A stretch of DNA of 64,000 bases from Macrostomum lignano. Its lineage: Eukaryota. Shown here piece by piece: positions 39,673 through 64,000 of the stretch. The stretch spans positions 226,119 through 290,118 of the forward strand of contig NIVC01001430.1 in NCBI GenBank assembly GCA_002269645.1, written 5' to 3'. Positions within the stretch are counted from its first letter, which is position 1. The number at the start of each line of letters is the position of its first letter. Below the pieces are notes generated by a model, which ran no database searches, was not told where the DNA came from, and saw only the letters and a list, made by a program, of their open reading frames with translations. The translations under genes were made by a program, and so were the position numbers.

Positions 39673-41198
39673 ATGATGATTCGCAGCAACATGACATGGT
39701 CAGAGGATAGGATTTTAATCAATTTTCTCAACCTTCTGCGCAATGAATTGAAGCGAGATATTGAGTACCACTCCGGCATCGTGAAGGCTGTTGGATTTCC
39801 GCTGGGATTTCTGCTTCAAATTCTCACGATAATCTTTCTAGTCAGGGGGCAGTCTGGCTACTCACAGTCAGCCAGGAGCTGGTTCTTGGTCGTTCTCAGC
39901 GCCGATGTCTGCAGCACGCTCTACCGACTGTACGAGCTCATTACTGTGGACTTCCAAAGCGCCAATCCGGACTCAAAGGAAACGCCTGGAATGGACTTCA
40001 TGCACCTAATGTGGGGTCTGATGCGTACTGAAGACAATGAGCTGCAGGAAGTGATGTGCAAGATATTCTTCTTCATCTTGTACTTCCCAGTGATTCTGTC
40101 ACCGGTGGCGCTAACAATCTGCTCACTGATTCGCACCTATGCGGTCAAGTATCCACTGAAAGCGAAGTTTGTACTAACGAAATTTCGCGACCGATGCCTG
40201 ATGTTATTAGCGGCCGGCATCTCGGCTGCTGCGTCGCTGGTTTTCTGCATGCTGCTAATTCAGGCGACATTTTTTCTTTTACCGTTCAAAATAACCACGC
40301 TGGATGGCCGGAAGATTTACCCTGGCCGCTGCAGCATGCCGGACTTCTCTAGTTTCAATACCAATAAAACCAATCATGCGATTGGCAGTTTAATCATGCT
40401 TGTCATCATATTCACTATCTGCGCATTGACATTCGTCTCATCCGTTATCATAATTATTGTCCTGTTTGACTCGAAGCGGAAACGTTTACAAATGGGCGTT
40501 GCTACGCACAATTCGAGCGAGAAGAATGAAGTTCGAGCGACTGCGATTCTTCTCGGCATGAACGTGTCGTTCTTTTTCTGCTTCCTGATGTCCAGAATCT
40601 GCATGGTTGTCAACACTCAAGTACACATATTTTACGACTACAAAGTGTGTAAGTAGTCCATACAAGTCTTGTGGATAATTTTCCTCCCTAATTTTGTAAA
40701 AAAAGATGCATGTATGATCTTATAAATCAAAGATTGAAAGGGAGTTCGATCGAAAATTTAGAAGAAGCGTACCCTTGGCATGGATTTTTCATTTGATCCT
40801 AGCTTATAATAATATAATTTTTCATGTGTACTAATTGTTTTGATCAGAAGGGCACTGGCATCTGTGGTTTTTGCATGCAATTTTGAGAGCTGAAAATTTA
40901 CCATGGAAAATTGCAAAGTTTTGGTCCTAATTAAACTTTTCGGTACTACACCAAACCCGTTTGCGTGCCGTTTCCTGTTTTATTGCAATCAGCATTAAAC
41001 TCAACGCTCTCATTTTCAGCTATTCTGACGGAAAAGTTCGCTGCATTCGCGTTCACCATTCCGTACTACACCAACGCTCTGTTCATAGCCGGATTATCGA
41101 AAAGATTCTACTACTTTTACATGCCCTGTCTAAAAAGGCTGGGTTCAGCAACATCAAAGAGCAGCTTGAATTCCAGCGGAAGTCAGAGGACTCTGTAG
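39673..41198 (+). CDS. Class A 7TM GPCR, paralogue 2, ~393 aa
   Basis: Exons 39673-40648 and 40993-41198, with the same intron position and phase as paralogue 1 and near-identical TM sequence. Confidence 0.85.
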
Positions 41199-49774: not shown

Positions 49775-52700
49775 GCTGTCTCGTCAACAGCAGCACCAGC
49801 AACAGTCATCTCTGTTATCTGGCTGCGAAAAATGTTGCCAAAAAGACAATTGTCCAGTGACCAGGGTCCGCTCCGCTCAAGCAGTCTGTCGCCAGTGCTT
49901 TCTAGCTTATTGCACTCATCAATTTAGGGCCGGCTTTGGTAAAAGTCAGCTGATCAGAGCTGGGGAACGGGTCCTGGTTGGCTTCTCTGGCGGCAATGGG
50001 GCTTGTGCTCTGCTGCGGCTTGTTAAACAGGTATGTGTGTTCCCTGCTCCCTGAGCCCCCTGGTTTCACTGGCCTCTGCTCCCTGAGCCCCCTGGTTTCA
50101 CTGGCCTCTGCTCCCTGAGCCCCCTGGTTTCACTGGCCTCTGCTCCCTGAGCCCCCTGGTTTCACTGGCCTCTGCTCCCTGAGCCCCCTGGTTTCACTGG
50201 CCTCTGCTCCCTGAGCCCCCTGGTTTCACTGGCCTCTGCTCCCTGAGCCCCCTGGTTTCACTGGCCTCTGCTCCCTGAGCCCCCTGGTTTCACTGGCCTC
50301 TGCTCCCTGAGCTGGCACTCTCCTGAACCCCCAGCTTCCTGAGCTGGCACTCTTCTGAACCCTCAGCTTCCTGAGCTGGCACTCTCCTGAACCCCCAGCT
50401 TCCTGAGCTTGCACTCTCCTGAACCCCCAGCTTCCTGAGCTGGCACTCTCCTGAACCCCCAGCTTCCTGAGCTGGCACTCTCCTGAACCCTCAGCTCCCT
50501 GAGCTGGCACTCTCCTGAACCCTCAGCTTCCTGAGCTGGCACTCTCCTGAACCCTCAGCTTCCTGAGCTGGCACTCTCCTGAACCCAAGCTACAAGCGAG
50601 CCCTAATTCAACAATTGCACCGCCTGATGACTCACACGCAGGGCCTAGCGGAGTCAACCCATCGCAAGCTTCGTTTCACACCAGTTTTTGTGTACATCGA
50701 TTTCGCCACCGTGTTCAACGACAATGGCGACGGGCCCCTTTCCGGGCGACGGGCGGCTGTGCTCGAACAGTTCGACGCCCATCTGCCGGTTGAGTTCGAA
50801 AGGCACTGCTTGACTGCGGCAGAACTTCTGCCAGGTTTGTCCGAAGCCTTGGCCGCCATGACTGACGGGTGCGCAAATTAAATTTATCGATGAGTATGTT
50901 ACAAAGAGAAACACGTGGTACTCTAATCCGCTCCTTTTGTCACTCCAATCCACTCCCGTTTGTCACTCCAATCCGCTCCCGTTTGTCACTCCAATCCGCT
51001 CCCGTTTGTCACTCCAATCCGCTCCCTGTCACTCCAATCCGCTCCCGTTTGTCACTCCAATCCACTCCCGTTTGTCACTCCAATCCGCTCCTTTTTGTCA
51101 CTCCAATCCACTCCCGTTCGTCACTCCAATCCGCTCCCGTTTGTCACTCCAATCCGCTCCCGTTTGTCACTCCAATCCGCTCCCTGTCACTCCAATCCGC
51201 TCCCGTTTGTCACTCCAATCCACTCCCGTTTGTCACTCCAATCCGCTCCTTTTGTCACTTCAATCTGCTCCCGTTTGTCACTCCAATCTGCTCCCGTTTG
51301 TCACTCCAATCCACTCCCGTTTGTCACTCCAATCCACTCCCGTTTGTCACTCCAATCCGCTCCCTGTCACTCCAATCCGCTCATGTTTGTCACTCCAATC
51401 TACTCCCGTTTGTCACTCCAATCCGCCCCCTGTTTCACTCCAATCCGCCCCCTGTTTCACTCCAATCCGCTCGTTTTTGTCACTTTAATCCGCCCCTGTG
51501 TCACTCCAATCCGCTCCGTTTGTCACTCCAATCCGCTCCCGTTTGTCACTTCAATCCGCCCCCTGTGTCACTCCAATCCGCCCCCGTTTGTCACTCAAAT
51601 CCGCTCCCGTTTGTCTCCCCAATCCGCTCCCGTTTGTCACTCCAATCCGCTCCCGTTTGTCTCCCCAATCCGCTCCCGTTTGTCACTCCAATCTGCTTCC
51701 GGTTGTCACTCCAATCCGCCCCCTGTGTCACTCCAATCCGCTCCGTTTGTCACTCCAATCCGCCCCCTGTGTCACTCCAATCCGCCCCCTGTGTCACTCC
51801 AATATTACATTATTAATAGTACTCGTATTTTACTTTATTTAACAGCACCGGTTACCGCGAACTGCTGCACCGGTCCGTGCACCGGTGCCTAGCCCTGGCC
51901 AGTCGGCAGTTCAACTGCAGCCGAGTGCTCACCGGTGAGACAGCCAGCCGGCTGGCCGAGCTCACCCTGCGCAGCGTCGCCCAGGGTCGGCTGAGCGCCG
52001 ATTCGGGCGCATTCAGCGCCATCGCAGCTGGTGGCGTCTGCCAGGTGCGGCCCCTGCGTCAGCTCACTTCGGCCGAGACCGCCCTGCTGAGTTGGCTGGC
52101 CGCCGACGGCCTCATGCCGGTGTGTCCGCGACCGGCCGACCCGGACAGTCCGTTGTTGAATGACGGCCAAGGCGGCGGCAGTATACCGGGGGTGATTGCC
52201 AGCTTCCTGGGCGGACTGCAACAGGTGATCTTCCGGGTTTGTGGGTCAGTTAGTGAGTCCGTTAGTGGGTCATTGAGACCTTTAGTGGGTCACTAAGTCC
52301 GTTAGTAGGTCATTGAGTCTGTTAGTTGATCATTGAGTCCGTTAGTGTGTCATTGAGTCTGTTAGTTGATCATTGAGTCCGTTAGTGGGTCATTGAGTCT
52401 GTTAGTGGGTCATTGTCTCAGTTAGTGGGTCACTGAGTCAGTTAGTGAGTCATCGAGTCCGTTAGGGGTCATTGAGACCTTTAGTGGGTCATTGAAACCG
52501 TTAGTGGGTCACTAAGTCCGTCAGTAGGTCATTGAGTCCGTTAGTGGGTCATTGAGTCCGTTAGTGGGTCATTGTCTCAGTTAGTGGGTCACTGAGTCAG
52601 TTAGTGAGTCATCGAGTCCGTTAGGGGTCATTGAGACCTTTAGTGGGTCATTGAAACCGTTAGTGGGTCACTAAGTCCGTCAGTAGGTCATTGAGTCCGT

Positions 52701-53438
52701 TAGTGGGTCATTGAGTCCGTTAGTGGGTCATTGTCTCAGTTAGTGGGTCACTGAGTCAGTTAGTGAGTCATCGAGTCCGTTAGGGGTCATTGAGACCTTT
52801 AGTGGGTCATTGAAACCGTTAGTGGGTCACTAAGTCCGTCAGTAGGTCATTGAGTCCGTTAGTGGGTCATTGAGTCCGTTAGTGGGTCAGTCAGTGTTTG
52901 GATTGAGAGAAGCAGCAGGCAGGTAATTTAATGTGTTAACTTGTTTTATTTTGATTTTCTTTAGAATTTCCATAAGCACTACTTACTCCTAATCGGTTGA
53001 GTAGTATGCAATGTATAGTAAAAAAACTCGAATGGATCTTATCGATTTCTCTTCCCGCAGTCGTTCCCAGCCACGGTGTACAATATTCTGCGCACTGGCG
53101 AGAAACTCCAGTCAGACAGTGTGGCAGCGGGCAGCTCCTCGTCTGACTCTGCAGCCGCCGCCGCCACACCTTGTCCTGCCTGCGGTCTGTCGATGCAGCA
53201 ACAGCCATCTGGCGATGACGGTGGCAACGTCAGAAGCAATTGCAACGCTTTGCGAGCTCTTCGACTGTCGGAGAATCTGGCTAGATCCGGGGACTCTCCA
53301 GAGCCTTCGACTGCTGCTGCCGGTCTGTGGGCGAAGGAGGGCGGGCGCTACTGTTACAGCTGCTCTGTGCTGCTCAACGGCTGCTCGAAACGGGCCGTGC
53401 TTGAGGAGTGCCTGATTGATGCCGATGGCGCTGACTGA
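49775..53438 (+). CDS. CTU2: Cytoplasmic tRNA 2-thiolation protein 2 (CTU2/NCS2), 5' end unresolved
   Basis: Exons 49775-50030, 50642-50868, 51846-52224 and 53061-53438 (phases 0,2,0). Motifs CEKC, CRQCF..HQFRAGFGK..GERVLVGFSGG, RVLTGETASRLA, VRPLRQLTSAE, SFPATVYNILRTGEKL, CYSC. The frame is also open upstream to ~49700. Confidence 0.9.
50045..50590. repeat. Two adjacent 32-bp minisatellites in a CTU2 intron
   Basis: TGAGCCCCCTGGTTTCACTGGCCTCTGCTCCC (50052-50310), then GAGCTGGCACTCTCCTGAACCCCCAGCTTCCT (50309-50590). Confidence 0.95.
50925..51800. repeat. ~23-bp minisatellite in a CTU2 intron
   Basis: Unit TTTGTCACTCCAATCCGCTCCCG. Confidence 0.95.
52240..52895. repeat. ~20-bp minisatellite with higher-order blocks in a CTU2 intron
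   Basis: Unit GTTAGTGGGTCATTGAGTCC. Confidence 0.93.
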
Positions 53439-53484
53439 GTGGTTGCTGTTGATTGATTGACCGGCTGGGAGGACATAATACTGT

Positions 53485-53486
53485 AC

Positions 53487-53520
<34 letters not shown>

Positions 53521-55325
53521 GATTTGGTTGATCAATTTATTGACTAAATGGTTGGTTGATTGATTGATTGATTGTCTAAATGGTTGATTGATTGATTGAT
53601 TGATTGTCTAAATGGTTGATTGATTGATTGACTAAATGGTTGATTGATTGATTGACTAAATGGTTGATTGATTGATTGTCTAAATGGTTGATTGATTGAT
53701 TGTCTAAATGGTTGATTGATTGATTGTCTAAATGGTTGATTGATTGATTGATTGTCTAAATGTTTGATTGATTGATTGTCTAAATGGTTAATTGATTGAT
53801 TGACTGTCTAAATGACTGATTGATTGTCTAAATGGTTGATTGATTGATTGACTAAATGGTTGATTGATTGATTGTCTAAATGGTTGATTGATTGATTGTC
53901 TAAATGGTTGATTGATTGATTGTCTAAATGGTTGATTGATTGATTGATTGTCTAAATGTTTGATTGATTGATTGTCTAAATGGTTAATTGATTGATTGAC
54001 TGTCTAAATGACTGATTGATTGTCTAAATGGTTGATTGATTGATTGACTAAATGGTTGATTGATTGATTGTCTAAATGGTTGATTGATTGATTGTCTAAA
54101 TGGTTGATTGATTGATTGTCTAAATGGTTGATTGATTGATTGATTGTCTAAATGTTTGATTGATTGATTGTCTAAATGGTTAATTGATTGATTGACTGTC
54201 TAAATGACTGATTGATTGTCTAAATGGTTGATTGATTGATTGACAAAATGGTTGATTGATTGATTGACTAAATGGTTGATTGATTGATTGTCTAAATGGT
54301 TGATTGATTGATTGTCTAAATGGTTGATTGATTGATTGATTGTCTAAATGTTTGATTGATTGATTGTCTAAATGGTTAATTGATTGATTGACTGTCTAAA
54401 TGATTGATTGATTGTCTAAATGGTTGATTGATTGATTGACTAAATGGTTGATTGATTGATTGACTAAATGGTTGATTGATTGATTGTCTAAATGGTTGAT
54501 TGATTGATTGTCTAAATGGTTGATTGATTGATTGACTAAATGGTTGATTGATTGATTGACTAAATGGTTGATTGATTGATTGTCTAAATGGTTGATTGAT
54601 TGATTGACTGATTGACTGACTAAATGGTTGATTGATTGATTGACTAAATGGTTGATTGATTGATTGTCTAAATGGTTGATTGATTGATTGTCTAAATGTT
54701 TGATTGATTGATTGTCTAAATGGTTAATTGATTGATTGACTGTCTAAATGACTGATTGATTGTCTAAATGGTTGATTGATTGATTGACAAAATGGTTGAT
54801 TGATTGATTGACTAAATGGTTGATTGATTGATTGTCTAAATGGTTGATTGATTGATTGACTGATTGACTGACTAAATGGTTGATTGATTGATTGACTAAA
54901 TGGTTGATTGATTGATTGTCTAAATGGTTGATTGATTGATTGTCTAAATGTTTGATTGATTGATTGTCTAAATGGTTGATTGATTGATTGTCTAAATGGT
55001 TGATTGATTGATTGTCTAAATGTTTGATTGATTGATTGTCTAAATGGTTAATTGATTGATTGACTGTCTAAATGACTGATTGATTGTCTAAATGGTTGAT
55101 TGATTGATTGACTAAATGGTTGATTGACTGATTGTCTAAATGGTTGATTGATTGATTGTCTAAATGGTTGATTGATTGATTGTCTAAATGGTTAATTGAC
55201 TGATTGACTGACTAAATGGTTGATTGGTTGGCTAAATGGTTGATTGACTGATTGTCTAAATGGTTGATTGATTGATTGACTGATTGACTGACTAAATGAT
55301 TGATTGATTGGCTAAAGGGTTGATT
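53485..55325. repeat. (TTGA)n-based compound satellite punctuated by TCTAAATGG
   Basis: Directly visible ~24-bp periodicity. Confidence 0.97.
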
Positions 55326-55885: not shown

Positions 55886-56206
55886 GTGAGTAGTATTATT
55901 AAATTACACGCACCCCACATTTTTACATGTAAAAATGAATATAGTCCCCACCTACACTCGAACTGTAATACGCCTCCGTCAGTTCGAGCTAACGAACGAA
56001 ACGCAACTCGCCCAAGCCGGCGTTCGATAAGGTACAAATCTTAGCTTTCTTATCTTAATACGACACACTAACCAACACTAGCGTTCTCCCAAAAGAAATA
56101 TTGAATTCAAAGTCCAATTCTTCCTTAGCCTTGGCCATTTATTTCTGCAAAGTATATTTGACTGAATTCGCCGCAAGTCCATACGCATTAAAAACGAGTA
56201 AGCAAA

Positions 56207-56752
56207 TTACCGCAATCTAATACGCAGATAGTTCATCGCGAAAGAACGCAAACGATTATAACAGCGCTTAAACAGATTCTCGGCGCCACCACCACTAATC
56301 ATGCTCGCTAGAAAATCCTTCAAACCACCACCACGATGCAGTTTAAAGTATAAATAAAACAAAACCCATATACCACAGTGCAGACTTGTTGGTTCTTGAA
56401 TAGCAAAACGCGAATATTCCCAATTTCCCCCTCCACAATTCCGTATAAACCACCGACGTATTAACTCACATGGATTTAACCCCAAGGAATCGAAATACTC
56501 TCCCTTCCTAGAGCCCCTCCTACCCAACCTAAAACCCCCCACCCATAACAAAACCCAATGAGAACCCGGCAAATTTGAAGTATCGGTATTCACGATCAGA
56601 AAATAATGCCTTCTGTCTCTCGGGATTCGCGGGATACTACTCAACAAATCGACAGGAAAAATACCCAAAAAACAAACGTCTTTAAAACCGTTACATAGAA
56701 TAATCACAACACGTTGCAAGAACAAGTTCGTTACACCTTCGCCTCGCCTCAT
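56207..56752 (-). CDS. Adenain-like cysteine maturation protease, 181 aa
   Basis: NTDTSNLPGSHW, EYFDSLG and QEPTSLHCG give the His/Asp/Cys triad. The ATG overlaps the MCP stop (ATGA). AATAAA lies at 56138-56143. Confidence 0.92.
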   Translation of the reverse strand: MRRGEGVTNLFLQRVVIILCNGFKDVCFLGIFPVDLLSSIPRIPRDRRHYFLIVNTDTSNLPGSHWVLLWVGGFRLGRRGSRKGEYFDSLGLNPCELIRRWFIRNCGGGNWEYSRFAIQEPTSLHCGIWVLFYLYFKLHRGGGLKDFLASMISGGGAENLFKRCYNRLRSFAMNYLRIRLR

Positions 56753-58071
56753 TTCCAAGCGGTTCCTGGCACAACGTCCCGCAGTTCGGTAATCTGTAGT
56801 TGCTTGTCGAAAACACCACCGAAAATAACGTTATAGACCTCCGCTGTAGCCGTTCCAAAACGCATCTCCAGTCGGACATTCCCTTCCTTATACAATTGTA
56901 CCGCCGGCGCAACTCCCCCGTCAGATCCTAACGAATACGCGAGTATCGTATACCCTCCGTTGTAGTCCGCCATCGAGAACCCCAAATCCCGTCCTTGTAA
57001 ATACAAACCCAGTTGTTGACGCAGAGTTGTATACTCCTTTGCACAATCCCCTGTGAAGTCGAATTGACTAGGCCGTGTCGGTACCGCCTCACCATTTACG
57101 TAAACTCCAACGCTGATCAAATTCGCATGCACGAAATTGAACGGATTTGTCGCCAGACTTCCATTAAATGCAGTATTTCCAACGACTACCACCAGCAAAA
57201 GACGTGGCACTCCGCTCGGAAACAGATTTTCGTGCGTATGGCTTAACGACCCTTGCGGTATTGTGAACGTACCCAATGATAAACTGCGATGAGGGTACAA
57301 GGCATTATGGGTCTTCAAACCATGTGCATGGGCTCCAATCACACTGGCAGATGGCTGAACATACCGCAAACGAAGCTCCGCACTCTGAATCTCAACCTCG
57401 TAATCCTTTAACACTGCCTCACCAATCTGTGCGGCACTTAACACGAATTTGCTCTTTGCCGGTAGTAACTTTATCCGCAAAGGCGTCTTTGACAACAAAT
57501 ACCGTGGCTGACGAAATAGATCCAAAAACAAAGGCCCTGAAACCGTACAAGTTCTCCCACCCGCAATTAGTGCCTGTCGCTTCACTCGCCCAACGTTCGC
57601 GACGCCGGTGGCATTCATTTTTCCAGCAGTGTCCTTGTAAAATCCCCAGGCAGCCAATCCGCCGTCTTGTCCCAACCGACCATACTCCAAAAGCGTCAGA
57701 AGCATGGCCTTGTACGGATACATGAAGCTCCCGCCTTCAACGACCGTATCTCCTATCCGCAATTGCACGTCTTCGAACAGCGTACTCACCACCATGTTAT
57801 TCAGACAGACATAGTTTTTCGCAGCATCCACAGCCCCTCCACTCTCGTCTACTACTCGGATTCCAACAGTTAGAACTGTTTCTTGTAAGTCGACATACAA
57901 ATCTCCAGCCGGTACAATCTCGAACTCAATTGGCCCTCCTTGCGTAATCCCATGTTGAGGCTGTATATCCGTGTAGCGACTGTCCACAACACTGAATTGT
58001 ACTGGTGGGCTGTCAAATAACGTCAACTCACTTTTCAATCCAGCGACGTCAGGCCCCAACAACTGATCCAT
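56749..58071 (-). CDS. Double jelly-roll major capsid protein, 440 aa, intact
   Basis: KSELTLFDSPPVQ, GPIEFEI, MYPYKAMLLTLL, DLFRQPRYLL and NPFNFVH, all Polinton MCP motifs. Confidence 0.92.
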   Translation of the reverse strand: MDQLLGPDVAGLKSELTLFDSPPVQFSVVDSRYTDIQPQHGITQGGPIEFEIVPAGDLYVDLQETVLTVGIRVVDESGGAVDAAKNYVCLNNMVVSTLFEDVQLRIGDTVVEGGSFMYPYKAMLLTLLEYGRLGQDGGLAAWGFYKDTAGKMNATGVANVGRVKRQALIAGGRTCTVSGPLFLDLFRQPRYLLSKTPLRIKLLPAKSKFVLSAAQIGEAVLKDYEVEIQSAELRLRYVQPSASVIGAHAHGLKTHNALYPHRSLSLGTFTIPQGSLSHTHENLFPSGVPRLLLVVVVGNTAFNGSLATNPFNFVHANLISVGVYVNGEAVPTRPSQFDFTGDCAKEYTTLRQQLGLYLQGRDLGFSMADYNGGYTILAYSLGSDGGVAPAVQLYKEGNVRLEMRFGTATAEVYNVIFGGVFDKQLQITELRDVVPGTAWK

Positions 58072-58464
58072 CTACTTGCCAAACAAACTGAATAACTTTT
58101 TAGTCGTGGCGCTCGGCTTTTTCTTTTTACGTATGCGTCTAACTCGCCGACCACGTCCAACCTGTTTTTTTACCGCAGGTGTCTTTCTGCTTATACCCTT
58201 TTTCCTGACTCGTCGTCGCTTAACCACAACTGGTCCATCAGTAGTCGTCAATCTACGTTTCTTACCCATTCCAATCGTCTTCTTCAGGAAGCTTAAACCG
58301 CCCTCTACTAAATCCTTCCGAGCTCTACGTAGCACGGGATATATCACTCTCTCTGTTAAATTCGTCAAATATCCGTATCCCTCGTACACAGGTATCGAAC
58401 TCGACCCACCACCCGTCCGCGGCTGTGTACTAGGTCCCGAATAGAATGCAAAAACCGGATCCAT
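58072..58464 (-). CDS. Basic core-like protein, 130 aa
   Basis: Gly motifs (RTGGG, YEGYG, VEGG) and an R/K-rich C-terminus. Its TAG directly abuts the MCP ATG. Confidence 0.75.
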   Translation of the reverse strand: MDPVFAFYSGPSTQPRTGGGSSSIPVYEGYGYLTNLTERVIYPVLRRARKDLVEGGLSFLKKTIGMGKKRRLTTTDGPVVVKRRRVRKKGISRKTPAVKKQVGRGRRVRRIRKKKKPSATTKKLFSLFGK

Positions 58465-58493
58465 GAATGCCGAGCGAAACTATACGTCAAAAT

Positions 58494-59636
58494 CTACTTA
58501 AAGTGCTTTGCTAATACCCGTGCTGTCTCTTTATCTAGATCTGATTCAGCCAACCACTGACCTCTCGAGTCGGGCATTCCCTCCCACTTGACAAAATATC
58601 GCCTGCCCTTCTTCCCCATACGCTCAACACGCTCGACCCGATCAATTTTAACAACCTCCGCCTCAGGTTCAGCCACTAGAAGCAGTTCACCTTGGTTGAA
58701 TCGACCCTCCAACACTGTCGAATCGTCCTCGGGGTCTAACAGACCATAAGACGGTGGCTTCGTAGAATACACCCGATGAATTCGATACACCCTATTACTC
58801 CATGTCGTTGTGTAACCCTTCTCAAATTTTCCCTTTTGACGTGCAAGTCGTACCCAATCACCAACCTTAAAACGCGGAATAGGCCTCACATCGTCGCCAT
58901 ACAACTCCTCCCACACCATGCCCTGCAGATGGCCATCCGCACTCACATCAATGGGGCTACGACCATTTAAACTGCGGTGTGGAGAGTTATTCAACGCAAG
59001 CTCTAATTTTGGTAGAACATCAAACCACCGGGCCAGATTTCGAGTCCGAAATAGTCGTAGTAATCGCTCCTTCACGGTGCGTATCAATCGCTCAGCCATG
59101 CTCGCTTTGTAGGTACTCTGACTTACGAAAAATCGTACGCCCTCACGCTTTAACATCGACTGAGTTTCTCGCCCAAGAAACTCTCGACCAGCATCGCCTT
59201 GTAAGTACAGCGGTTTAAACCCCGTGCGGAATATCTCATACAATACACGGCTCACCTCACTTGGCTTCTTCGTCTTCAAAGCTCTCAAGCGAGCCAACCT
59301 AGTGAAACAGTCGACTAATACGAGGATGTACCTGTAACCACGGTTTTCGTCCTGATATTGCGGTAAGTCTGCCAAATCAATCTGCATTTGAAATTTTGCA
59401 ACGGGCGGTAGTTGTATTTTCGGAGTTTTGAACTTCCGATTCGACTTCTGGAACAGATGTATCTCCTTCGTCCTACGCACCCACTTGTCAACAACAGCCT
59501 TGGCTTTTTTTTGCGTTAACTCCGGATACCTCCGCCTCAAAACTCGTATAAATTGCTTCTTATTACCACTAAACGCAGTAGGGCGTTCCAAGTCGAAAAA
59601 TGCCACGTCCAGAAACTTAAAAAAAATCGCTTCCAT
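58494..59636 (-). CDS. Retroviral-like (rve) DDE integrase with C-terminal chromodomain, 380 aa, intact
   Basis: QIDLAD, QGDAGREF and MAERLIRTVK supply D,D,E. Chromodomain-like RYFVKWEGMPDSRGQWL. Confidence 0.93.
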   Translation of the reverse strand: MEAIFFKFLDVAFFDLERPTAFSGNKKQFIRVLRRRYPELTQKKAKAVVDKWVRRTKEIHLFQKSNRKFKTPKIQLPPVAKFQMQIDLADLPQYQDENRGYRYILVLVDCFTRLARLRALKTKKPSEVSRVLYEIFRTGFKPLYLQGDAGREFLGRETQSMLKREGVRFFVSQSTYKASMAERLIRTVKERLLRLFRTRNLARWFDVLPKLELALNNSPHRSLNGRSPIDVSADGHLQGMVWEELYGDDVRPIPRFKVGDWVRLARQKGKFEKGYTTTWSNRVYRIHRVYSTKPPSYGLLDPEDDSTVLEGRFNQGELLLVAEPEAEVVKIDRVERVERMGKKGRRYFVKWEGMPDSRGQWLAESDLDKETARVLAKHFK

Positions 59637-59663
59637 CCTCCGTATTAGCGGCTCTCCAAATTT

Positions 59664-59837
59664 TTATGATGCAGAACCCACATTAGTATTGCAACAGTTA
59701 AAACTTGCCTTTACCGTTACGTCTCCGTCAGGCTCCTCTGCGCGCAGTACGCGTTCCAATAAATTCGCAATGCAACCACCCTCCCCCAAAAAACAAATTC
59801 TAAAACGCTTGTACAACCACTGAAACACATTCGCCAT
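59664..59837 (-). CDS. Small viral ORF, 57 aa (below the ORF-track cutoff)
   Basis: MANVFQWLYKRF...ILMWGSAS. It fills the intergenic gap, and its ATG lies 34 nt downstream of a TATAAGCA motif. Confidence 0.5.
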   Translation of the reverse strand: MANVFQWLYKRFRICFLGEGGCIANLLERVLRAEEPDGDVTVKASFNCCNTNVGSAS

Positions 59838-59880
59838 CCCCAGACTCGATATATTTCACGTAAAATACAATGCTTATACA

Positions 59881-60552
59881 TTACGCTAGAGTCTCATAAT
59901 CTTCCAAGGCTTGCAAGTCCCCACCGCGCGACTCTGACTCGGGAGTAGGTTCCATGGGTGTTCCTTCCTCCAGAACGTTTCGCATATGCCGCCCTAGCAT
60001 CGACGGTGGAATTGATTCCCTGCGAAGCAGTGAGACGAAACGTTCCAGCTCTGCCGCCGGAGGCGATCTCCCTCGTTTCAATGGTTGGTCGCGAGTGACA
60101 TACTCTACTAGCTCGTCAAAATCTCCTCCTCCAATCTCATTCGCAGCACCTGTCAGCCTTGCCTTCAGACGGTCGAAACGTGGTTGTACATTACGGGGGA
60201 GTCGCCTCCCCTTCTCGGTCTCACCCTCCGTCGGGCCATCATGACCAACGGATGAGCGAACCTCTGGCGGGGTCTCACCATTCTTATTGTACAGAGACCG
60301 CGTTTGTAGCAACCGACTCTCCAAATCAGTTCTTTCCAACTGTGCGGTTGTAGGCTGCAGACTAGTCGATTCACCAATCTCCCGGTCAAGCCTATTCATC
60401 TCACCTTGCATTTCAACAATATTCTTACCCAAAGCGTCCACAGGTCCGTCCAATACTCCCGTCCTTCGCTCATCTTTCGACGTACATTCCAAATAAGCCT
60501 GCAACGGCAGCAAAACCATTCGCTGAAGAGTTCCTCCTCTATTGACTGGCAT
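59881..60552 (-). CDS. Viral protein of unknown function, 223 aa
   Basis: Intact ORF starting 1 nt after the upstream stop. RMVLLP N-terminal motif and a probable coiled coil. Confidence 0.75.
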   Translation of the reverse strand: MPVNRGGTLQRMVLLPLQAYLECTSKDERRTGVLDGPVDALGKNIVEMQGEMNRLDREIGESTSLQPTTAQLERTDLESRLLQTRSLYNKNGETPPEVRSSVGHDGPTEGETEKGRRLPRNVQPRFDRLKARLTGAANEIGGGDFDELVEYVTRDQPLKRGRSPPAAELERFVSLLRRESIPPSMLGRHMRNVLEEGTPMEPTPESESRGGDLQALEDYETLA

Positions 60553-60553
60553 A

Positions 60554-60991
60554 TTACCTACGCCGTCCGGCCCGAATTGCTCGAACTAGATTTGCCGTCC
60601 CCGCAGCCGTACCGGCCAATCCCGATGTAATCCCTAGAGCCGTGCCAATGGCTGGCAAAGCAGAAATTATCGGAGCAAGAAACGGCAGGAAACCACCACG
60701 CTGTACCAAAATTTCCTTCCTGGCTCTAGTTGATTTTTTCTCCTTCAACAATTCTTGTATCGGTTTCCGATAGCGTTCTAAACGTTTCTTGTCACACGAC
60801 TTTAACGGCACGCGTCCTTTTACGATATTCAAAAGAAACTCAACCAGGCAACGCACCTCGCCCGGACTTAAACTTCGCAGAAATCGCTTGCGCTGGTCCA
60901 ATCCCCGAAGCCTCGCGACAACTTGCAATAGGAAGGCACACTGGGACAATGATCGCGCGCTTTGTACGCTCTTTTCTGTCAGCCCGGTCAT
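60554..60991 (-). CDS. Core/pX(mu)-like precursor, 145 aa
   Basis: Basic N-terminal domain, then QRGG|FLPFLAPIISALPAIG...RRR, resembling adenovirus pX (MRGG|ILPLLIPLIAAAIGAVPG) and a conserved Polinton protein. Confidence 0.78.
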   Translation of the reverse strand: MTGLTEKSVQSARSLSQCAFLLQVVARLRGLDQRKRFLRSLSPGEVRCLVEFLLNIVKGRVPLKSCDKKRLERYRKPIQELLKEKKSTRARKEILVQRGGFLPFLAPIISALPAIGTALGITSGLAGTAAGTANLVRAIRAGRRR

Positions 60992-61035
60992 TGTCTATCA
61001 TGCCTTCTACTGATTCCGACTGTACTTGCTTATAA

Positions 61036-61440
61036 TCAATCGTCTCGTACCCTGAAGTGCAGCACAGCAATCACATGGCTTCCATCAGGGAAATTCAAAT
61101 CTTGCCCCCGTTGGTCGGCCAGACGAATGGAGATCTCATTAATGTAGCTCCGATTTGTCCGCAAGTAATATGGCGTCTGCAAAGCATTTCCGTCTCGTCG
61201 AAATATTCCGTTCTTTTCCTGGCGAAACTCAACCACGCGAAGTAGCGGAACCTGACGACTTCCAACCATTTGATATTCAACAATGTCGCTATAGCAGTAC
61301 ATGTAAACACTCCGCAGTATCGCTTCGGGTATTCTATCCAAATAGACCTTCGTCAGACCCCACGCACGATTTTTCCTCCAATACTCAACCACCTCCTTTA
61401 ACGTATCCCCGGCAGGCCGTATTACCTGCGTACTCTTCAT
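61036..61440 (-). CDS. Minor capsid (penton) C-terminal half, 134 aa from the ATG at 61440
   Basis: YSDIVEYQMVGSRQVPLLRVV...EISIRLADQRGQDLNF...VLHFR, a Polinton mCP signature. Confidence 0.85.
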   Translation of the reverse strand: MKSTQVIRPAGDTLKEVVEYWRKNRAWGLTKVYLDRIPEAILRSVYMYCYSDIVEYQMVGSRQVPLLRVVEFRQEKNGIFRRDGNALQTPYYLRTNRSYINEISIRLADQRGQDLNFPDGSHVIAVLHFRVRDD

Positions 61441-61991
61441 CCAGACGGCGAAACCAGGTTCCAAACAGCACGAAAATCGTACCAATTCGAATCTAATATA
61501 CCTGCCTCGTCCATTGCATTCGTTATGTTCGTCCAGGATTCACCCGCCGCATCCGCGGGTTGGGTGCGTCCGTCGTGAGCTGTCAAACCCCACGTACTGA
61601 AACCAAAGCATGTCAAAAAACTCCTTGGCAGTTCAATGCCCATACGTCGGCTGCCGGAATTTCGCAAATACCAAACATATGCTTTAGTAGCCGGCGTCCA
61701 CGACAAGTGTACCTCCAAATCATCGGCCTGCCAGACCTTACCCAAGAAGACTTCATCTGTTTTCTCGATAATTTTCTCGATGTTGCAATAATATATCACC
61801 TTCACCTCTTCTCGAAGTTCCGCCGAGGAAGTTTCCGCCGGCGGGCTGTTACATAGCAAATCCACCAAAGCCACTTCATACTTCCCAGCCGGCGCTAGAT
61901 TCAATGGTGTAGTTAGCCGCACCCGAAACTCGTGCGCAGAATTGGTCGGATAACTACGATCGTTTGACGGAATAAACACAAAGAAACTCAT
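61437..61991 (-). CDS. Minor capsid (penton) N-terminal half, 184 aa
   Basis: FFVFIPSNDRSYPTNSAHEFRVRLTTPLNL...YEVALVDL, a Polinton mCP N-terminal signature. Confidence 0.85.
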   Translation of the reverse strand: MSFFVFIPSNDRSYPTNSAHEFRVRLTTPLNLAPAGKYEVALVDLLCNSPPAETSSAELREEVKVIYYCNIEKIIEKTDEVFLGKVWQADDLEVHLSWTPATKAYVWYLRNSGSRRMGIELPRSFLTCFGFSTWGLTAHDGRTQPADAAGESWTNITNAMDEAGILDSNWYDFRAVWNLVSPSG

Positions 61992-62021
61992 AATCTCACC
62001 CCATAAGCTGTAGCCGCTTCC

Positions 62022-62735
62022 TCAAAACTTGCTTATAATATCCTCCTCCTTGATAGTCTCCGGACGCATATAAACAACCTGGTGAGTGTCACTCGGAAAG
62101 ACATTCGTCCGTATGCGTATCATATCCGGCGTGTCCTGTCGTAAGTCTATGAAGAGATAGCTGAAGGCCTTGTCACCCGTCGCGTCGTCATAAGCCTGCA
62201 CCAGAAATCTACTAGCTCGGGGGTACATCTGCCGACCCAAATGTTCAACGGCGCTACGATCCCTAACATTTCGGCTTAAACAGATATAACTCGTCGATAA
62301 ACTTCTTTTTCTTGCCTCAGGATCCGCAGGGTCAAACAAATTTTGGCACAAATAAAGACAAGTCAATGGCGTATGATGAGCCAATTTGGTGAATACAGCG
62401 GTAAAAGCGCGTTGCTTTGCAACTTCACCCTGCAAATCATCAACAACGACTAAATCGTGCGGCTTGAATCTAGCCAACAACTGATCGGGGAATCCCTGTA
62501 CGAAGTGACATTCGCCACTTCCACCCAATGTCCAACATTCTCGAACTCGTTTTTCCTCAGACGAATGTAACTCTGTACCGTGACACCAAATTAGACGCCT
62601 TGGTACTACTCGAAACAGACCCAAGCGCTCCCTTACCAGTCGAAGCACCCATTCAGTCTTTCCCGAATTCGAAGGACCTGCGACGATAAACGTCGAGTCA
62701 TGAGCAAATCGCAAGTCGAATGTACGCCTGTCCAT
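62022..62735 (-). CDS. A32/FtsK-like DNA packaging ATPase, 237 aa, intact
   Basis: Walker A GPSNSGKT, Walker B LVVVDD, then AHH, LCQNLF and YLFIDL. Confidence 0.93.
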   Translation of the reverse strand: MDRRTFDLRFAHDSTFIVAGPSNSGKTEWVLRLVRERLGLFRVVPRRLIWCHGTELHSSEEKRVRECWTLGGSGECHFVQGFPDQLLARFKPHDLVVVDDLQGEVAKQRAFTAVFTKLAHHTPLTCLYLCQNLFDPADPEARKRSLSTSYICLSRNVRDRSAVEHLGRQMYPRASRFLVQAYDDATGDKAFSYLFIDLRQDTPDMIRIRTNVFPSDTHQVVYMRPETIKEEDIISKF

Positions 62736-62736
62736 T

Positions 62737-63160
62737 CTAGGCACCCAAACGCTGTTTTACGTTCATAACACGGGATACCAGTTTTGCGGCCAAACGTTCC
62801 CCCACTTAGTTGTAGGATCCGCAGCAATCTCTCGAGCTCCTGCTTCGAGTTGTTGATCGGCCTTTGAACGCTCTGCCACGTCCGAGTGCTTCTCGTATGC
62901 CAGGTCGTGTAAGAGACACAATTTATCGAGCCGATTCTTCCCAGTATCGCCCCGCGCTAAACGTTCTCTCAATCTGGTCCCGGGGCGCAGAATTGGTAAC
63001 CCCCCGGCAAATGAAGCTCCCCTGGGAGATGATTTATTACCCAATTAACAATACCAAACCCCGTCTGACCTCGACGAGAAGAGATTTTCTTAGCTCGAGT
63101 CGACTTTGCTGCTGTCGAACGCACTCGCTTCTTCTTCTTCTGTCGGCCTTGTGTTCCCAT
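62737..63160 (-). pseudogene. Parvovirus VP1u-like phospholipase A2, two apparent 1-nt deletions (141 aa when restored)
   Basis: LHLPGGYQFC[G]PGTRL...LDKLCLLHDLAY...ADQQL. Restoring a G at ~62986 and ~62800 yields one ORF ending 1 nt before the ATPase ATG. Confidence 0.85.
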
Positions 63161-63303
63161 CCCACTTAATTGTACCAAAAGAACCAATTGCATTTGCTTA
63201 TACACACAGTGGTTAAATCACGAGCAGTATATTGTATTAATAATCAAAGTGACAAGCCGCCACCATTCCCACCACCGACCGACGGCTCCGGGCGTGACCA
63301 GCA

Positions 63304-63799
63304 TCACATGTTAGTGCTGCCCATGCCACCCGTCTCGCGAACCGCCACCGGCTCCGGTTGTCGTGCCACACCCCGGCAGCTGGCCCTCGCGAGCTCGACG
63401 ACTTCTACCGGGGCGTGACGCAGCGCTCCAGAATCAATTGGGCCAACGCTGGTGGCACACGACAGATGAACTTTCTCATCTGACGTGTTGTGCAGGATCA
63501 CGCGGTTCCCGTATAGTCCGGGTCAACCACGCCCCCGCACATTTAGGCCTCGGTTGGCCCAACTGGACCGGCTCGCTATCCGACCATGGTGCCCGGCGGC
63601 GGCAGCATCACCCGGAGGCCGGTGCGAATGATGGCCGTGTCAAAGGCCTTCACAGTGCGGTCTTCGCACGTGGTAGGTCGTAGCCACACCCACGGCCGTA
63701 GCTCGCGAGGCATCACTGCCCCGGCATCCGTGAGCACTACGCGCAGCGGGACGTCGAGCAAGAGTCGGAGCTCATAGTGGCTGCGGGATCATAGTTCAT
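63304..63799 (-). pseudogene. dut: Trimeric dUTPase with several frameshifts
   Basis: Motifs in order across frames: GYDL, IIRTGL, ASRSS, GVVDPDYTG, ILHN, RETGGMGST. Confidence 0.8.
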
Positions 63800-64000
63800 C
63801 TTATGCTTAGGAGGTTCTTCGTCCTCTAAAATAAGTCTAGTACTACCCGCGTAATCCTCGTCCGCAATCAAAAAAACTAAGCCTAGTACTAATCCCCTGC
63901 AACTGCCATCATAGGCCTAGAAAAACGAAGAGAAAGAAGGAAAGGCGGATTCTTGCATATACATTCGATAATTGCGCGCATATATTGTGTGCAGAAAAAG

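What the first reader, a model, noticed from the sequence alone, without database searches (positions are those of the whole stretch)
56207..63202. Viral genes organised as TATAAGCA-headed, stop-start-coupled groups
Seen: exact TATAAGCA five times in ~8 kb on the coding strand, against about 0.12 expected for a given 8-mer under uniform composition. Four copies lie 34-39 nt before the ATGs of PLA2, penton-N, the pX-like gene and a 57-aa ORF. The next gene carries no such motif just upstream of its ATG and is tightly coupled: PLA2-ATPase 1-nt gap, pentonN-pentonC ATGA overlap, pX-223aa 1-nt gap, 57aa-integrase 27 nt, core-MCP 0 nt, MCP-protease ATGA. Inference: a shared promoter giving very short 5' UTRs, plus termination-reinitiation, leaky scanning or splicing to express the second cistron. 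The core ATAAG also recalls the baculovirus late TAAG motif, perhaps by coincidence.
Basis: partly seen in the sequence, partly recalled or inferred. Interest (0 to 1): 0.8.

Follow-up and report, generated by a model that had tools for sequence, protein, structure and literature searches.

The report
Shared TATA-type promoter box in Polinton
A decaying virus-like transposon (Polinton/Maverick, adintovirus-like) in an invertebrate genome carries the same 8-base TATA-type box in front of each group of its capsid genes. Its relatives carry the box at the same places, so it is most likely the element's own promoter signal rather than a chance repeat.

Summary
TATAAGCA occurs five times on the coding (minus) strand between 63202 and 58188 and never on the other strand. 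Four copies lie 33-38 nt before the ATGs of PLA2, penton, pX and a 57-aa ORF.

The count alone is borderline: some 8-mer reaches five dispersed copies in 5.8% of shuffles. Conservation decides it. Five related lineages carry the same box at the same gene heads, amid unconserved flanks. More distant relatives carry TATAAACA or TATAAAGA there, so the baculovirus TAAG likeness is coincidental.

All 18 upstream ATGs lie within 33 nt of the box's first T. This fits a TATA box about 30 nt before the start site, giving leaders of roughly 10-25 nt.

- The fifth copy, inside the core gene, is the conserved MCP promoter, so core-MCP is not translational coupling.
- "Penton-N/C" is one gene broken by a frameshift. 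PLA2 and dUTPase are also decayed.
- Two one-mismatch copies head core and probably dUTPase.

The tight junctions (PLA2-ATPase, pX-223aa, MCP-protease) are conserved. The pX ORF is the longest ATG-free stretch of the gene array, which favours leaky scanning there. No transcript data exist, so the mechanism is inferred.

The parts
63954..63961 (-). TATATGCA, a one-mismatch copy of the box, 49 nt before an ATG at the head of the dUTPase remnant. Possible seventh head.
   Evidence: The same variant heads the small ORF in L001 (sequence). In L024 the dUTPase is headed by TATAAATA.
63400..63700 (-). dUTPase remnant (bounds rounded). Broken: only 36% of the L024 homologue aligns, with 3 stops inside the aligned stretch.
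   Evidence: The L024 homologue matches PF00692 at 3.9e-31.
63195..63202 (-). TATAAGCA copy 1, head of the PLA2-ATPase unit (ATG at +42 from the first T).
   Evidence: Homologous boxes: CATAAGCA in L003 and L029, TATAAGCT in L024, TATAAGCG in L031.
62737..63160 (-). PLA2-like gene, parvovirus-VP1-type. Broken: at least 2 frameshifts (homology found in three frames).
   Evidence: The L003 homologue matches PF08398 at 1.7e-11.
62022..62735 (-). Packaging ATPase (237 aa, intact). Starts 1 nt after the PLA2 stop.
   Evidence: Pox_A32, E 0.023, below the cut-off. Homologues at 52-62% identity. Single frame.
62030..62037 (-). TATAAGCA copy 2, inside the last codons of the ATPase gene. Head of penton (ATG at +46).
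   Evidence: Exact in L003, L024, L029 and L031; TATAAGTA in L030. In those five the TAA inside the box is the ATPase stop codon.
61036..61991 (-). Penton-like gene.
   Evidence: It is a single ORF of 302 aa in L003 and 304 aa in L031. Two alignment segments (HSPs) in two frames. The penton fold itself was not tested.
61027..61034 (-). TATAAGCA copy 3, 2 nt after the penton stop. Head of the pX-223aa unit (ATG at +43).
   Evidence: L001 has the exact box (+41); L003 has TATAAGCG (+42).
60554..60991 (-). pX-like core protein gene (145 aa). It has no internal ATG in any frame.
   Evidence: PF05829 Adeno_PX, E 1.3e-4. It is the longest ATG-free interval of the array.
59881..60552 (-). 223-aa gene of unknown function. 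Starts 1 nt after the pX stop.
   Evidence: 34% identical to the 247-aa gene of L001.
59871..59878 (-). TATAAGCA copy 4, 2 nt after the 223-aa stop. Head of the small-ORF-integrase unit (ATG at +41).
   Evidence: L003 has the exact box (+39).
59664..59837 (-). Conserved small ORF (57 aa) with an acidic stretch and paired cysteines near its C-terminus.
   Evidence: Similar peptides lie just before or overlapping the integrase start in L001, L003, L004, L026 and L032.
58494..59636 (-). Integrase, rve core plus chromodomain (380 aa, intact).
   Evidence: PF00665 at 5.2e-7 and PF00385 at 1.5e-5. Single frame.
58509..58516 (-). TATTAGCA, a one-mismatch copy inside the integrase 3' end. Head of the core gene (ATG at +52).
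   Evidence: The homologous site is exact in L003 (+46) and TATAAGTA in L001 (+47).
58072..58464 (-). Basic core-like protein gene (130 aa).
58188..58195 (-). TATAAGCA copy 5, inside the core gene. Inferred MCP promoter: the MCP ATG is the first ATG downstream (+124).
   Evidence: Exact in L001 (+159) and L003 (+207), with identical ATA AGC codons. Analogous boxes lie inside the core gene in L004, L032 and L033.
56749..58071 (-). Major capsid protein, double jelly-roll (440 aa, intact).
   Evidence: 103 homologues. Model pLDDT 86.6. Foldseek top hits are iridovirus, Sputnik, PBCV-1 and mavirus MCPs, E about 1e-16.
56207..56752 (-). Cysteine protease, adenain/Ulp1-like (181 aa). Its start overlaps the MCP stop (ATGA).
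   Evidence: Weak match to ASFV S273R protease, E 0.039. 45% identical to the L001 homologue.
56138..56143 (-). AATAAA, 64 nt after the protease stop. Apart from one inside PLA2 (63038), it is the only such hexamer on the coding strand of the array. Possible common poly(A) signal.

Best explanation
What the region is. Window 56207-64000 (minus strand) is the 3' part of an endogenous, partly decayed Polinton/Maverick of the adintovirus type. Its gene order is dUTPase, PLA2, ATPase, penton, pX, 223-aa gene, small ORF, integrase, core, MCP, protease. The polymerase side lies beyond the window end.

What the motif is. TATAAGCA (extended consensus TATAAGCAA) is this lineage's version of a TATA-type core-promoter box. 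It is inferred to direct host RNA polymerase II to start about 30 nt downstream. The result is six or seven transcription units:
- (dUTPase)
- PLA2-ATPase
- penton
- pX-223aa
- small ORF-integrase
- core
- MCP-protease

Inferred leaders are about 11-22 nt, and about 94 nt for MCP, whose box is embedded in the core gene.

3' ends. No canonical poly(A) hexamer separates the units, so the transcripts are probably 3' co-terminal near 56120.

Downstream ORFs. These are inferred to be translated from the same mRNAs:
- The 223-aa gene by leaky scanning across the short-leadered, ATG-free pX ORF.
- Protease, and probably ATPase, by low-efficiency re-initiation at the overlapping stop/start.
- Integrase after the small ORF, which would act as a damping upstream ORF.

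Shown versus inferred.
- Shown: motif positions, strand, conservation, junction conservation, ATG distributions and gene identities.
- Inferred: that the box is a promoter, the start-site position, the polymerase, the 3' ends and all translational mechanisms.
For: 1. Conservation as an island. Across 21 heads from 7 loci, only positions 0-8 carry information (0.8-2.1 bits; flanks at most 0.3). Homologous heads keep the box in lineages with MCP identity of 45-65% and ATPase identity of 52-62%.

2. The constraint is on DNA, not protein.
- The ATPase-end copy supplies the stop codon in L003, L024, L029, L030 and L031, but is read in another frame in the window.
- The copy inside the core gene keeps identical ATA AGC codons in three lineages whose core proteins align over only 36-46% of their length.

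3. TATA nature. L032 (MCP 37% identical) has 9 exact TATAAACA against 0.79 expected. Eight of them lie at gene heads in the right orientation, with the ATG at +34 to +39. L033 has TATAAAGA or TATAAGAA before pX and penton and inside the core gene before MCP. The dUTPase of L024 has TATAAATA.

4. Geometry.
- True start codons, judged by N-terminal homology, lie at +37 to +60 from the first T (+84 for one PLA2 head).
- All 18 upstream ATGs lie at +8 to +33. None lies in the 265 nt from +34 to the start codons (P about 3e-4 under uniform placement).
- Metazoan TATA boxes sit at -32 to -29 of the start site (PMC4691747).

5. Strand. There are 14 exact copies on coding strands of the window, L001, L003, L024, L029 and L031, and none on the other strand.

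6. Coupling. Sixteen junctions of four pair types lie between -11 and +3 nt across six lineages.

7. The pX ORF.
- It is the longest ATG-free interval of the whole array in the window (439 nt), L001 (440 nt) and L003 (398 nt). It also has no internal ATG in L032.
- Short leaders increase leaky scanning (PMC3177215).
- Invertebrate densoviruses combine TATA boxes with leaky scanning (PMC3820778).
Against: - No transcript data of any kind. Start sites, polycistrony and 3' ends are all inferred.
- TATAAGCA departs from the canonical box at positions 6-7, and the invariant GCA(A) tail is not explained by TBP contacts alone.
- In two further lineages the heads carry TTAAGCA (L004) or CGTAAGTG (L026). 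These keep TAAG but lose the TATA part.
- No initiator consensus appears near +30.
- In L032 the inferred leaders would be only about 4-9 nt.
- The ATG-free MCP leaders are not significant once composition is allowed for (P(0) = 0.68, 0.35, 0.77).
- The ATG-free pX ORF is only weakly beyond what its amino-acid sequence gives (synonymous shuffles, p = 0.09-0.5). The pX, PLA2 and small-ORF start codons have a purine at -3, which does not favour leaky scanning.
- No 18S-complementary pentamer of the calicivirus type lies near the stop/start junctions.
- The window copy is decayed, so it may not be expressed at all.
Confidence: 0.55

Rival explanations
1. Virus-specific late promoter. The uniform box is not simply a host TBP site. 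It is a late-gene code read with the help of an element-encoded factor (a TBP or PC4 homologue), which would give the virion module its own timing. The analogy is the non-canonical late TATA variant of beta- and gamma-herpesviruses, which is read by a viral TBP-like protein (recalled knowledge).
For: - The box is identical to 8-9 bases within a genome, beyond what TBP contacts need.
- It differs between lineages: TATAAGCA, TATAAACA, TATAAAGA.
- The non-virion dUTPase gene of L024 uses TATAAATA instead.
- Relative L004 encodes a TBP-repeat protein (PF00352, 5.3e-8). The L033 locus encodes a PC4 homologue (PF02229, 2.4e-18) about 2.5 kb beyond its protease gene, and whether that gene belongs to the element was not tested.
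- TBP homologues were noted in adinto-like viruses of protists (PMC8502044).
Against: - No such factor has been seen in the window clade. Its polymerase-side genes are outside the window and outside L024.
- The early-versus-late contrast rests on a single gene.
- L004, the TBP carrier, has the least TATA-like boxes.
Confidence: 0.15
2. Initiator-type element. Transcription starts inside the motif, as at the baculovirus late TAAG element. The polymerase might then be non-host (dependence on a helper virus).
For: - TAAG is the part retained in the divergent heads of L004 (TTAAGCA) and L026 (CGTAAGTG).
- ATGs are enriched just after the box, and about a third of them are in frame with the gene.
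- Adintovirus particles were recovered from baculovirus-infected insect cells (PMC8502044).
Against: - The homologous heads in L032 and L033 have no TAAG.
- Out-of-frame upstream ATGs at +12 to +33 would burden such mRNAs. Some of them open long overlapping ORFs. Yet none occurs beyond +33.
- No RNA polymerase gene was seen in any locus.
- The host's cohesin SA gene is closest to flatworm and mollusc sequences, not to hosts of baculoviruses.
Confidence: 0.1
3. RNA-level boundary signal. The motif would mark 3'-end formation, or processing of a polycistronic precursor (for example before spliced-leader addition), at the ends of upstream genes.
For: - Copies sit on, or 2 nt after, the stop codons of ATPase, penton and the 223-aa gene. 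In five relatives the TAA of the box is the ATPase stop.
- The host may be a flatworm, a group known for trans-splicing (recalled knowledge).
Against: - The best-conserved copy lies inside the core ORF, 124-207 nt before its stop.
- The copy before core lies inside the integrase ORF.
- There is no polypyrimidine/AG acceptor next to the boxes.
- The distance to the downstream ATG is constrained, not the distance to the upstream stop.
Confidence: 0.08
4. Compaction only. The boxes are promoters, but the tight junctions mean nothing for translation. Each downstream gene would have its own unrecognised promoter or a spliced mRNA, with the acceptor just before its ATG as in densoviruses.
For:
- The PLA2-ATPase junctions read TAG-A-ATG in the window and CAG-T-ATG in L003. 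These resemble the CAG/aATG acceptor reported for a densovirus (PMC3820778).
- L004 has clear acceptor-like sequences before several ATGs.
- MCP holds more than 20 internal ATGs, and no re-initiation motif was found.
Against: - No box variant within one mismatch lies before ATPase, the 223-aa gene, integrase or protease. The one near-match in MCP is a by-product of coding for a conserved peptide and is absent in relatives.
- The same four pairs stay juxtaposed in rearranged genomes such as L032.
- There is no polypyrimidine tract at the window junctions.
Confidence: 0.3
5. Chance repeat, or a by-product of coding.
For: Some 8-mer reaches five dispersed copies in 5.8% of shuffles of the region. 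Three of the five copies overlap coding sequence.
Against: - Position, strand and conservation at homologous heads in five other lineages.
- Different reading frames at the same site.
- Unconserved flanks.
Confidence: 0.02

Closest known systems
Polintons/Mavericks of animals (adintoviruses; Starrett et al. 2021, PMC8502044)
   Same: - Gene set: double jelly-roll MCP, penton-like gene, A32-type ATPase, adenain-like protease, pX-like core protein, parvovirus-type PLA2, and an rve integrase with a chromodomain.
- Protein-primed PolB lies upstream in relative L024.
- The element is integrated in an animal genome.
   Different: - PLA2 and pX are separate genes in separate units here. That paper describes a fused PLA2X.
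- That paper contains no promoter or splicing analysis. I found no description of a shared head motif in animal Polintons.
Metazoan TATA-box core promoter
   Same: An A/T-rich box on the coding strand. The inferred start site lies about 30 nt downstream, matching the -32 to -29 preference (PMC4691747). Relatives carry canonical-looking versions (TATAAACA, TATAAAGA, TATAAATA).
   Different: - G-C at positions 6-7.
- An invariant tail (GCAA).
- Identical copies at every unit head.
- Very short inferred leaders.
- No recognisable initiator.
Uniform promoter motifs of virophages and polinton-like viruses (mavirus; PgVV-14T, bioRxiv 10.1101/2022.07.28.501842)
   Same: One short motif is repeated in front of most genes of a small Polinton-related genome.
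   Different: Those motifs copy the late promoter of a giant helper virus and work in its cytoplasmic factory. Here no helper is indicated, and the motif looks like a nuclear Pol II TATA box.
Baculovirus late promoter
   Same: The letters TAAG occur in the box and in the variants of L004 and L026.
   Different: - The homologous boxes of L032 and L033 lack TAAG.
- The upstream-ATG pattern places the start downstream of the box.
- There is no viral RNA polymerase gene.
- The host is probably not an arthropod.
Late promoters of beta- and gamma-herpesviruses read by a viral TBP-like protein (recalled knowledge)
   Same: A distinctive TATA variant restricted to virion (late) genes. Some Polinton relatives encode TBP or PC4 homologues.
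   Different: No such factor is known for the window clade, and there is no expression timing data.
Bicistronic expression in compact eukaryotic viruses: leaky scanning (densovirus NS1/NS2, PMC3820778; rice tungro bacilliform virus, recalled) and termination-reinitiation (caliciviruses, influenza B; recalled)
   Same: - An ATG-free upstream ORF (pX) with a short leader.
- ATGA or near-adjacent stop/start junctions, conserved among relatives.
   Different: - Start contexts are not weak.
- No upstream 18S-complementary motif was found.
- MCP is far longer than typical re-initiation-permissive ORFs.
- Nothing has been shown at the RNA or protein level.

Membership tests
Polinton/Maverick (adintovirus-like element) | Double jelly-roll major capsid protein | tested here: met
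   Model pLDDT 86.6. Foldseek E about 1e-16 to iridovirus, Sputnik, PBCV-1 and mavirus MCPs. Homologues include fish 'F54H12.2-like' proteins and a coral 'Major capsid protein'.
Polinton/Maverick (adintovirus-like element) | Retrovirus-like (rve) integrase | tested here: met
   PF00665 at 5.2e-7 plus chromodomain PF00385 at 1.5e-5.
Polinton/Maverick (adintovirus-like element) | Protein-primed family B DNA polymerase | not testable with these tools
   None in the window; the element runs off at 64000. In relative L024 a PF03175 polymerase (1.8e-25) lies directly upstream of dUTPase-PLA2-ATPase.
Polinton/Maverick (adintovirus-like element) | Packaging ATPase and adenain-like maturation protease | tested here: inconclusive
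   ATPase: Pox_A32 E 0.023, below the cut-off; the homologue in L031 gives a weak PF04665 match. Protease: E 0.039 to ASFV S273R. Position and synteny fit.
Polinton/Maverick (adintovirus-like element) | Penton (single jelly-roll minor capsid protein) | not tested
   No family or PDB sequence match for the intact L003 homologue. It is named by position only.
Polinton/Maverick (adintovirus-like element) | Terminal inverted repeats and target-site duplication | not testable with these tools
   One end is outside the window. The 3' flank shows no similarity to the tails of L001 or L003.
TATA-box core promoter | TBP-type A/T-rich box upstream of genes, on the coding strand | tested here: met
   TATAAGCA occurs at 5 heads plus 2 variants. 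The homologous boxes are TATAAACA (L032), TATAAAGA (L033) and TATAAATA (L024 dUTPase).
TATA-box core promoter | Box at about -30 of the transcription start | tested here: inconclusive
   Indirect only. All 18 upstream ATGs lie at or before +33 and none beyond. There are no 5'-end data.
Baculovirus-type late initiator | TAAG core conserved at the heads | tested here: not met
   Present in the window clade, L004 and L026, but absent from the homologous heads of L032 and L033.
Baculovirus-type late initiator | Virus-encoded RNA polymerase; start inside the motif | not testable with these tools
   No polymerase-like ORF was noticed in the loci, but no complete genome of the window clade is in hand. 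The start site is unknown.
Termination-reinitiation (stop-start coupling) | Overlapping or adjacent stop and start codons | tested here: met
   Distances are -11 to +3 nt at PLA2-ATPase, pX-next gene, core-MCP and MCP-protease in six lineages.
Termination-reinitiation (stop-start coupling) | Upstream ribosome-tethering motif complementary to 18S rRNA | tested here: not met
   The calicivirus-type pentamer occurs in the 100 nt upstream of only 2 of 18 junctions. This was a simple test and other tethers are not excluded.
Leaky-scanning bicistronic mRNA | Upstream ORF free of AUGs in all frames | tested here: met
   Met for pX only: 0 internal ATGs in the window, L001 and L032, and 1 in L003. It is the longest ATG-free interval of each array. 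Not met for MCP or the small ORF.
Leaky-scanning bicistronic mRNA | Weak context or cap-proximal first AUG | tested here: inconclusive
   The context has a purine at -3 (not weak). Cap proximity (about 11-13 nt) is inferred from the box position only.

The most novel reading that the evidence does not exclude
Animal Polintons carry their own promoter code. A genome-wide uniform, lineage-specific TATA variant is restricted to the virion (late) module. It is read with an element-encoded general-transcription-factor homologue (TBP or PC4 type, as found in relatives L004 and L033). This would give these 'transposons' a virus-like early/late programme, comparable to the viral pre-initiation complex of herpesvirus late genes.
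Probability: 0.15. Interest if true: 0.7.

Novelty: new variant of a known kind. Interest (0 to 1): 0.45.

Why it matters
How animal Polintons/adintoviruses are transcribed is almost unknown. The papers I could search annotate proteins but not promoters.

What the finding offers:
- A conserved box marks each unit head, including an MCP promoter hidden inside the core-protein gene. This gives a concrete, testable transcript map.
- It provides a simple sequence marker for finding unit boundaries and true start codons in new Polinton genomes.
- It gives a handle on whether these elements run an autonomous late programme.
- The conserved bicistronic pairs suggest how structural and enzymatic proteins are kept in proportion.

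It does not change the picture of what Polintons are, and TATA-driven compact units are what one would expect of a nuclear DNA virus.

Tried and rejected
- Baculovirus-like initiator: rejected as the main reading. L032 and L033 heads lack TAAG, and upstream ATGs stop at +33.
- ATG-free MCP leaders as proof of an MCP mRNA: they looked striking (124, 159 and 207 nt), but composition-aware resampling gives P(0) = 0.68, 0.35 and 0.77. I rely instead on conservation of the box and its codons.
- TATAAGGA at 56892 as a protease promoter: rejected. It encodes a conserved MCP peptide and is not kept at DNA level in L001 or L003.
- Poly(A)/terminator reading: the copies inside ORFs argue against it.
- Initiator search near +30: no information.
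- Calicivirus-type tethering pentamer near the junctions: absent.
- Contig ends of Logan relatives as transcript ends: there are no poly(A) tails and the flanks look genomic.
- Finding the element's 3' end by similarity to the tails of relatives, or finding other copies in the window: nothing.
- Rfam scan of the window: no hits.
- IMG/VR scan with the MCP: no relatives.
- The JGI metagenome scan gave only distant, short loci without the motif.
- Host identification from SRA run numbers in the literature: no hits.
- Penton identity by PDB, PHROG or Pfam sequence search: nothing.
- One look-up (P0026) was not on record.

Full report
**1. What is there**

The minus strand of window 56207-64000 carries a colinear set of virus-like genes:
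- a dUTPase remnant
- a parvovirus-type PLA2
- an ATPase
- a penton-like gene
- a pX-like core protein (PF05829, E 1.3e-4)
- a 223-aa gene
- a 57-aa ORF
- an integrase with rve and chromo domains
- a basic core-like protein
- a 440-aa capsid protein
- a cysteine protease (Pfam results)

Evidence for the gene identities:
- The capsid protein has 103 homologues, including fish 'F54H12.2-like' proteins and a coral 'Major capsid protein'.
- Its model (pLDDT 86.6) matches the double jelly-roll capsid proteins of iridovirus, Sputnik, PBCV-1 and mavirus at E about 1e-16.
- The protease weakly matches the ASFV S273R protease.
- No polymerase is in the window. In relative L024 a protein-primed PolB (PF03175, 1.8e-25) lies directly upstream of dUTPase-PLA2-ATPase. 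The element therefore runs off the window at 64000.

Surroundings and host:
- Downstream of the protease lie host satellite arrays.
- Elsewhere the window holds host genes, for example cohesin SA. Its best matches are trematodes and a sea slug at 65-70% identity.
- The thing is therefore an endogenous Polinton/Maverick of the adintovirus type in an invertebrate, possibly a flatworm.

The copy is decaying:
- PLA2 has at least two frameshifts.
- The penton-like gene has one frameshift.
- The dUTPase is a remnant with three stops in the aligned part.
- The other eight genes align to relatives in a single frame.

**2. The observation**

- TATAAGCA is present five times on the coding strand and never on the other strand of the element.
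- Four copies end 34, 38, 35 and 33 nt before the ATGs of PLA2, penton, pX and the 57-aa ORF. The fifth lies inside the core gene.
- The statistic needs care. For a pre-specified 8-mer about 0.14 copies are expected. When any 8-mer may be chosen, five dispersed copies arise in 5.8% of dinucleotide shuffles.
- Placement and conservation are what establish the motif.

**3. Conservation**

Contigs encoding close homologues of the MCP and ATPase were fetched. The box at each homologous head is listed below.

| Head | Window | Relatives |
|---|---|---|
| ATPase stop / penton head | exact | exact in L003, L024, L029, L031; TATAAGTA in L030 |
| pX head | exact | exact in L001; TATAAGCG in L003 |
| Small-ORF head | exact | exact in L003; TATATGCA in L001 |
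| Integrase 3' end / core head | TATTAGCA | exact in L003; TATAAGTA in L001 |
| Inside the core gene, before MCP | exact | exact in L001 and L003 |
| PLA2 head | exact | CATAAGCA in L003 and L029; TATAAGCT in L024; TATAAGCG in L031 |

- Anchored on the box, 21 heads show information only at positions 0-8 (TATAAGCAA). The flanks are unconserved.
- The constraint is on the nucleic acid. At the ATPase end the TAA of the box is the stop codon in five relatives, but the window reads it in another frame.
- Inside the core gene the same ATA AGC codons persist in three lineages whose core proteins barely align.

**4. What kind of signal**

Two further lineages keep TAAG but lose TATA: TTAAGCA in L004 and CGTAAGTG in L026. 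Two other lineages decide against it:
- L032 (MCP 37% identical) has nine exact TATAAACA against 0.79 expected. Eight are at gene heads in the right orientation, with the ATG at +34 to +39.
- L033 has TATAAAGA or TATAAGAA before pX and penton, and inside the core gene before MCP.
- The dUTPase of L024 has TATAAATA.

The family-wide element is therefore a TATA-type box with lineage-specific letters.

Geometry agrees:
- Start codons judged by N-terminal homology lie at +37 to +60 from the first T.
- All 18 upstream ATGs lie at +8 to +33.
- None lies in the 265 nt between +34 and the start codons (P about 3e-4).
- Several of those upstream ATGs open long out-of-frame ORFs. They would be harmful if transcribed.
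- Metazoan TATA boxes sit at -32 to -29 (PMC4691747). A start about 30 nt downstream explains the boundary.

Inferred leaders in the window are about 12, 16, 13, 11 and 22 nt, and about 94 nt for MCP. No initiator consensus emerged.

**5. The groups**

The boxes define these units:
- (dUTPase)
- PLA2-ATPase
- penton
- pX-223aa
- small ORF-integrase
- core
- MCP-protease

- The penton pair is one broken gene. It is a single ORF of 302-304 aa in L003 and L031.
- MCP has its own box inside the core gene in every lineage examined.

The remaining pairs are real and conserved. Sixteen junctions across six lineages lie between -11 and +3 nt. The same pairs persist in the rearranged genome of L032. 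No box within one mismatch precedes the downstream genes.

Only two canonical poly(A) hexamers lie on the coding strand of the window array. One is inside PLA2 and one is 64 nt after the protease. This suggests 3' co-terminal transcripts.

**6. How the second cistrons might be read (inference)**

- **pX to the 223-aa gene.** The pX ORF is the longest ATG-free interval of the whole array in the window (439 nt), L001 (440 nt) and L003 (398 nt). It also has no internal ATG in L032. An inferred leader of about 12 nt, together with the known rise of leaky scanning on short leaders (PMC3177215), favours leaky scanning to the 223-aa gene. The depletion is only weakly beyond what the protein sequence gives, and the start context is not weak.
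- **MCP to protease.** MCP has more than 20 internal ATGs, so the protease would need re-initiation, splicing or an unseen promoter. No calicivirus-type tethering pentamer was found.
- **Small ORF to integrase.** The small ORF is conserved and abuts or overlaps the integrase start. It may act as a damping upstream ORF.
- **Splicing.** This cannot be excluded. The PLA2-ATPase junction resembles the acceptor-before-ATG arrangement of a densovirus (PMC3820778).

**7. Comparison and novelty**

- The element is a new member of the animal Polinton/adintovirus group. Unlike the fused PLA2X described for that group (PMC8502044), PLA2 and pX are separate genes here.
- Uniform promoter motifs are known for virophages and polinton-like viruses, where they copy a giant helper virus.
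- For animal Polintons I found no description of a shared head motif.
- The most novel reading not excluded is a virus-specific late-promoter code. It is prompted by the within-genome uniformity of the box, by the canonical box on the dUTPase of L024, and by TBP and PC4 homologues in the loci of relatives. I give it 0.15.

**8. Verdict**

- The mechanism is probable but untested at the RNA level.
- Interest is moderate.

Noticed in passing
window 60554-60991 (-); L001 573-1016; L003 3080-3514; L032 2612-3001 (-): The pX ORF contains no ATG in any frame. It is the longest ATG-free interval of each gene array, running exactly from its own start codon to the start codon of the next gene.
   Followed up: yes
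window 59664-59837 (-); upstream of the integrase in L001, L003, L004, L026, L032: A small ORF with an acidic stretch and paired cysteines near its end is conserved just before, or overlapping, the integrase start in lineages down to 36% MCP identity. Function unknown.
   Followed up: partly
L004 11955-12203 (-); L033 14358-14717 (-): The loci of two Polinton relatives encode homologues of general Pol II factors: a single TBP repeat (PF00352, 5.3e-8) and PC4 (PF02229, 2.4e-18). Whether the PC4 gene lies inside the element was not checked.
   Followed up: partly
L026 183-193 and 1283-1293 (same in L027, L028): A lineage with 52% ATPase identity has no TATAAGCA. It carries CGTAAGTGTTG at the PLA2 head and just after the ATPase stop. 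Its penton-like gene is also called as two overlapping ORFs (182 + 116 aa).
   Followed up: partly
L004 880-2140: Three repeated modules of roughly 100 nt (about 880-990, 1750-1850 and a shorter third copy about 2050-2135) each end in a polypyrimidine tract, AG and TAAGCATGG. They look like 3' splice sites placed directly before start codons, which suggests spliced mRNAs in that lineage.
   Followed up: no
window 62022-62037 (-) versus L003 2097, L024 4838, L029 1885, L030 1125, L031 1226: In five relatives the ATPase stop codon is the TAA inside the box. In the window the ATPase reads through the box in another frame and ends 8 nt after it.
   Followed up: partly
window 50044-55281: Four adjacent satellite arrays (periods 32, 23, 20 and 24/48/72 nt) with strong strand skew lie directly downstream of the element. 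The element's own 3' end, somewhere between about 55300 and 56207, could not be placed.
   Followed up: partly
window 130-3001: A satellite with a period of about 21 nt stays open in several frames on both strands and gives 950-aa pseudo-ORFs.
   Followed up: no
window 7593-11615 (-): Host cohesin SA/STAG exons, one of them 557 codons long. The best matches are trematodes (Echinostoma, Schistosoma) and Elysia at 65-70% identity. This is the only clue to the host. Tandem repeats at 6363-7503 lie next to it.
   Followed up: partly
window 29994-30974 and 39673-40656 (+): Two near-identical ORFs of 326 and 327 aa lie about 9.7 kb apart. They are rich in hydrophobic stretches and look like multi-pass membrane proteins, and they appear to be a recent tandem duplication.
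   Followed up: no
window 3817 (+), 9208, 18364, 27478 (-): Four further exact TATAAGCA copies lie outside the element. That is about the number expected by chance, and they were not examined for gene context.
   Followed up: no
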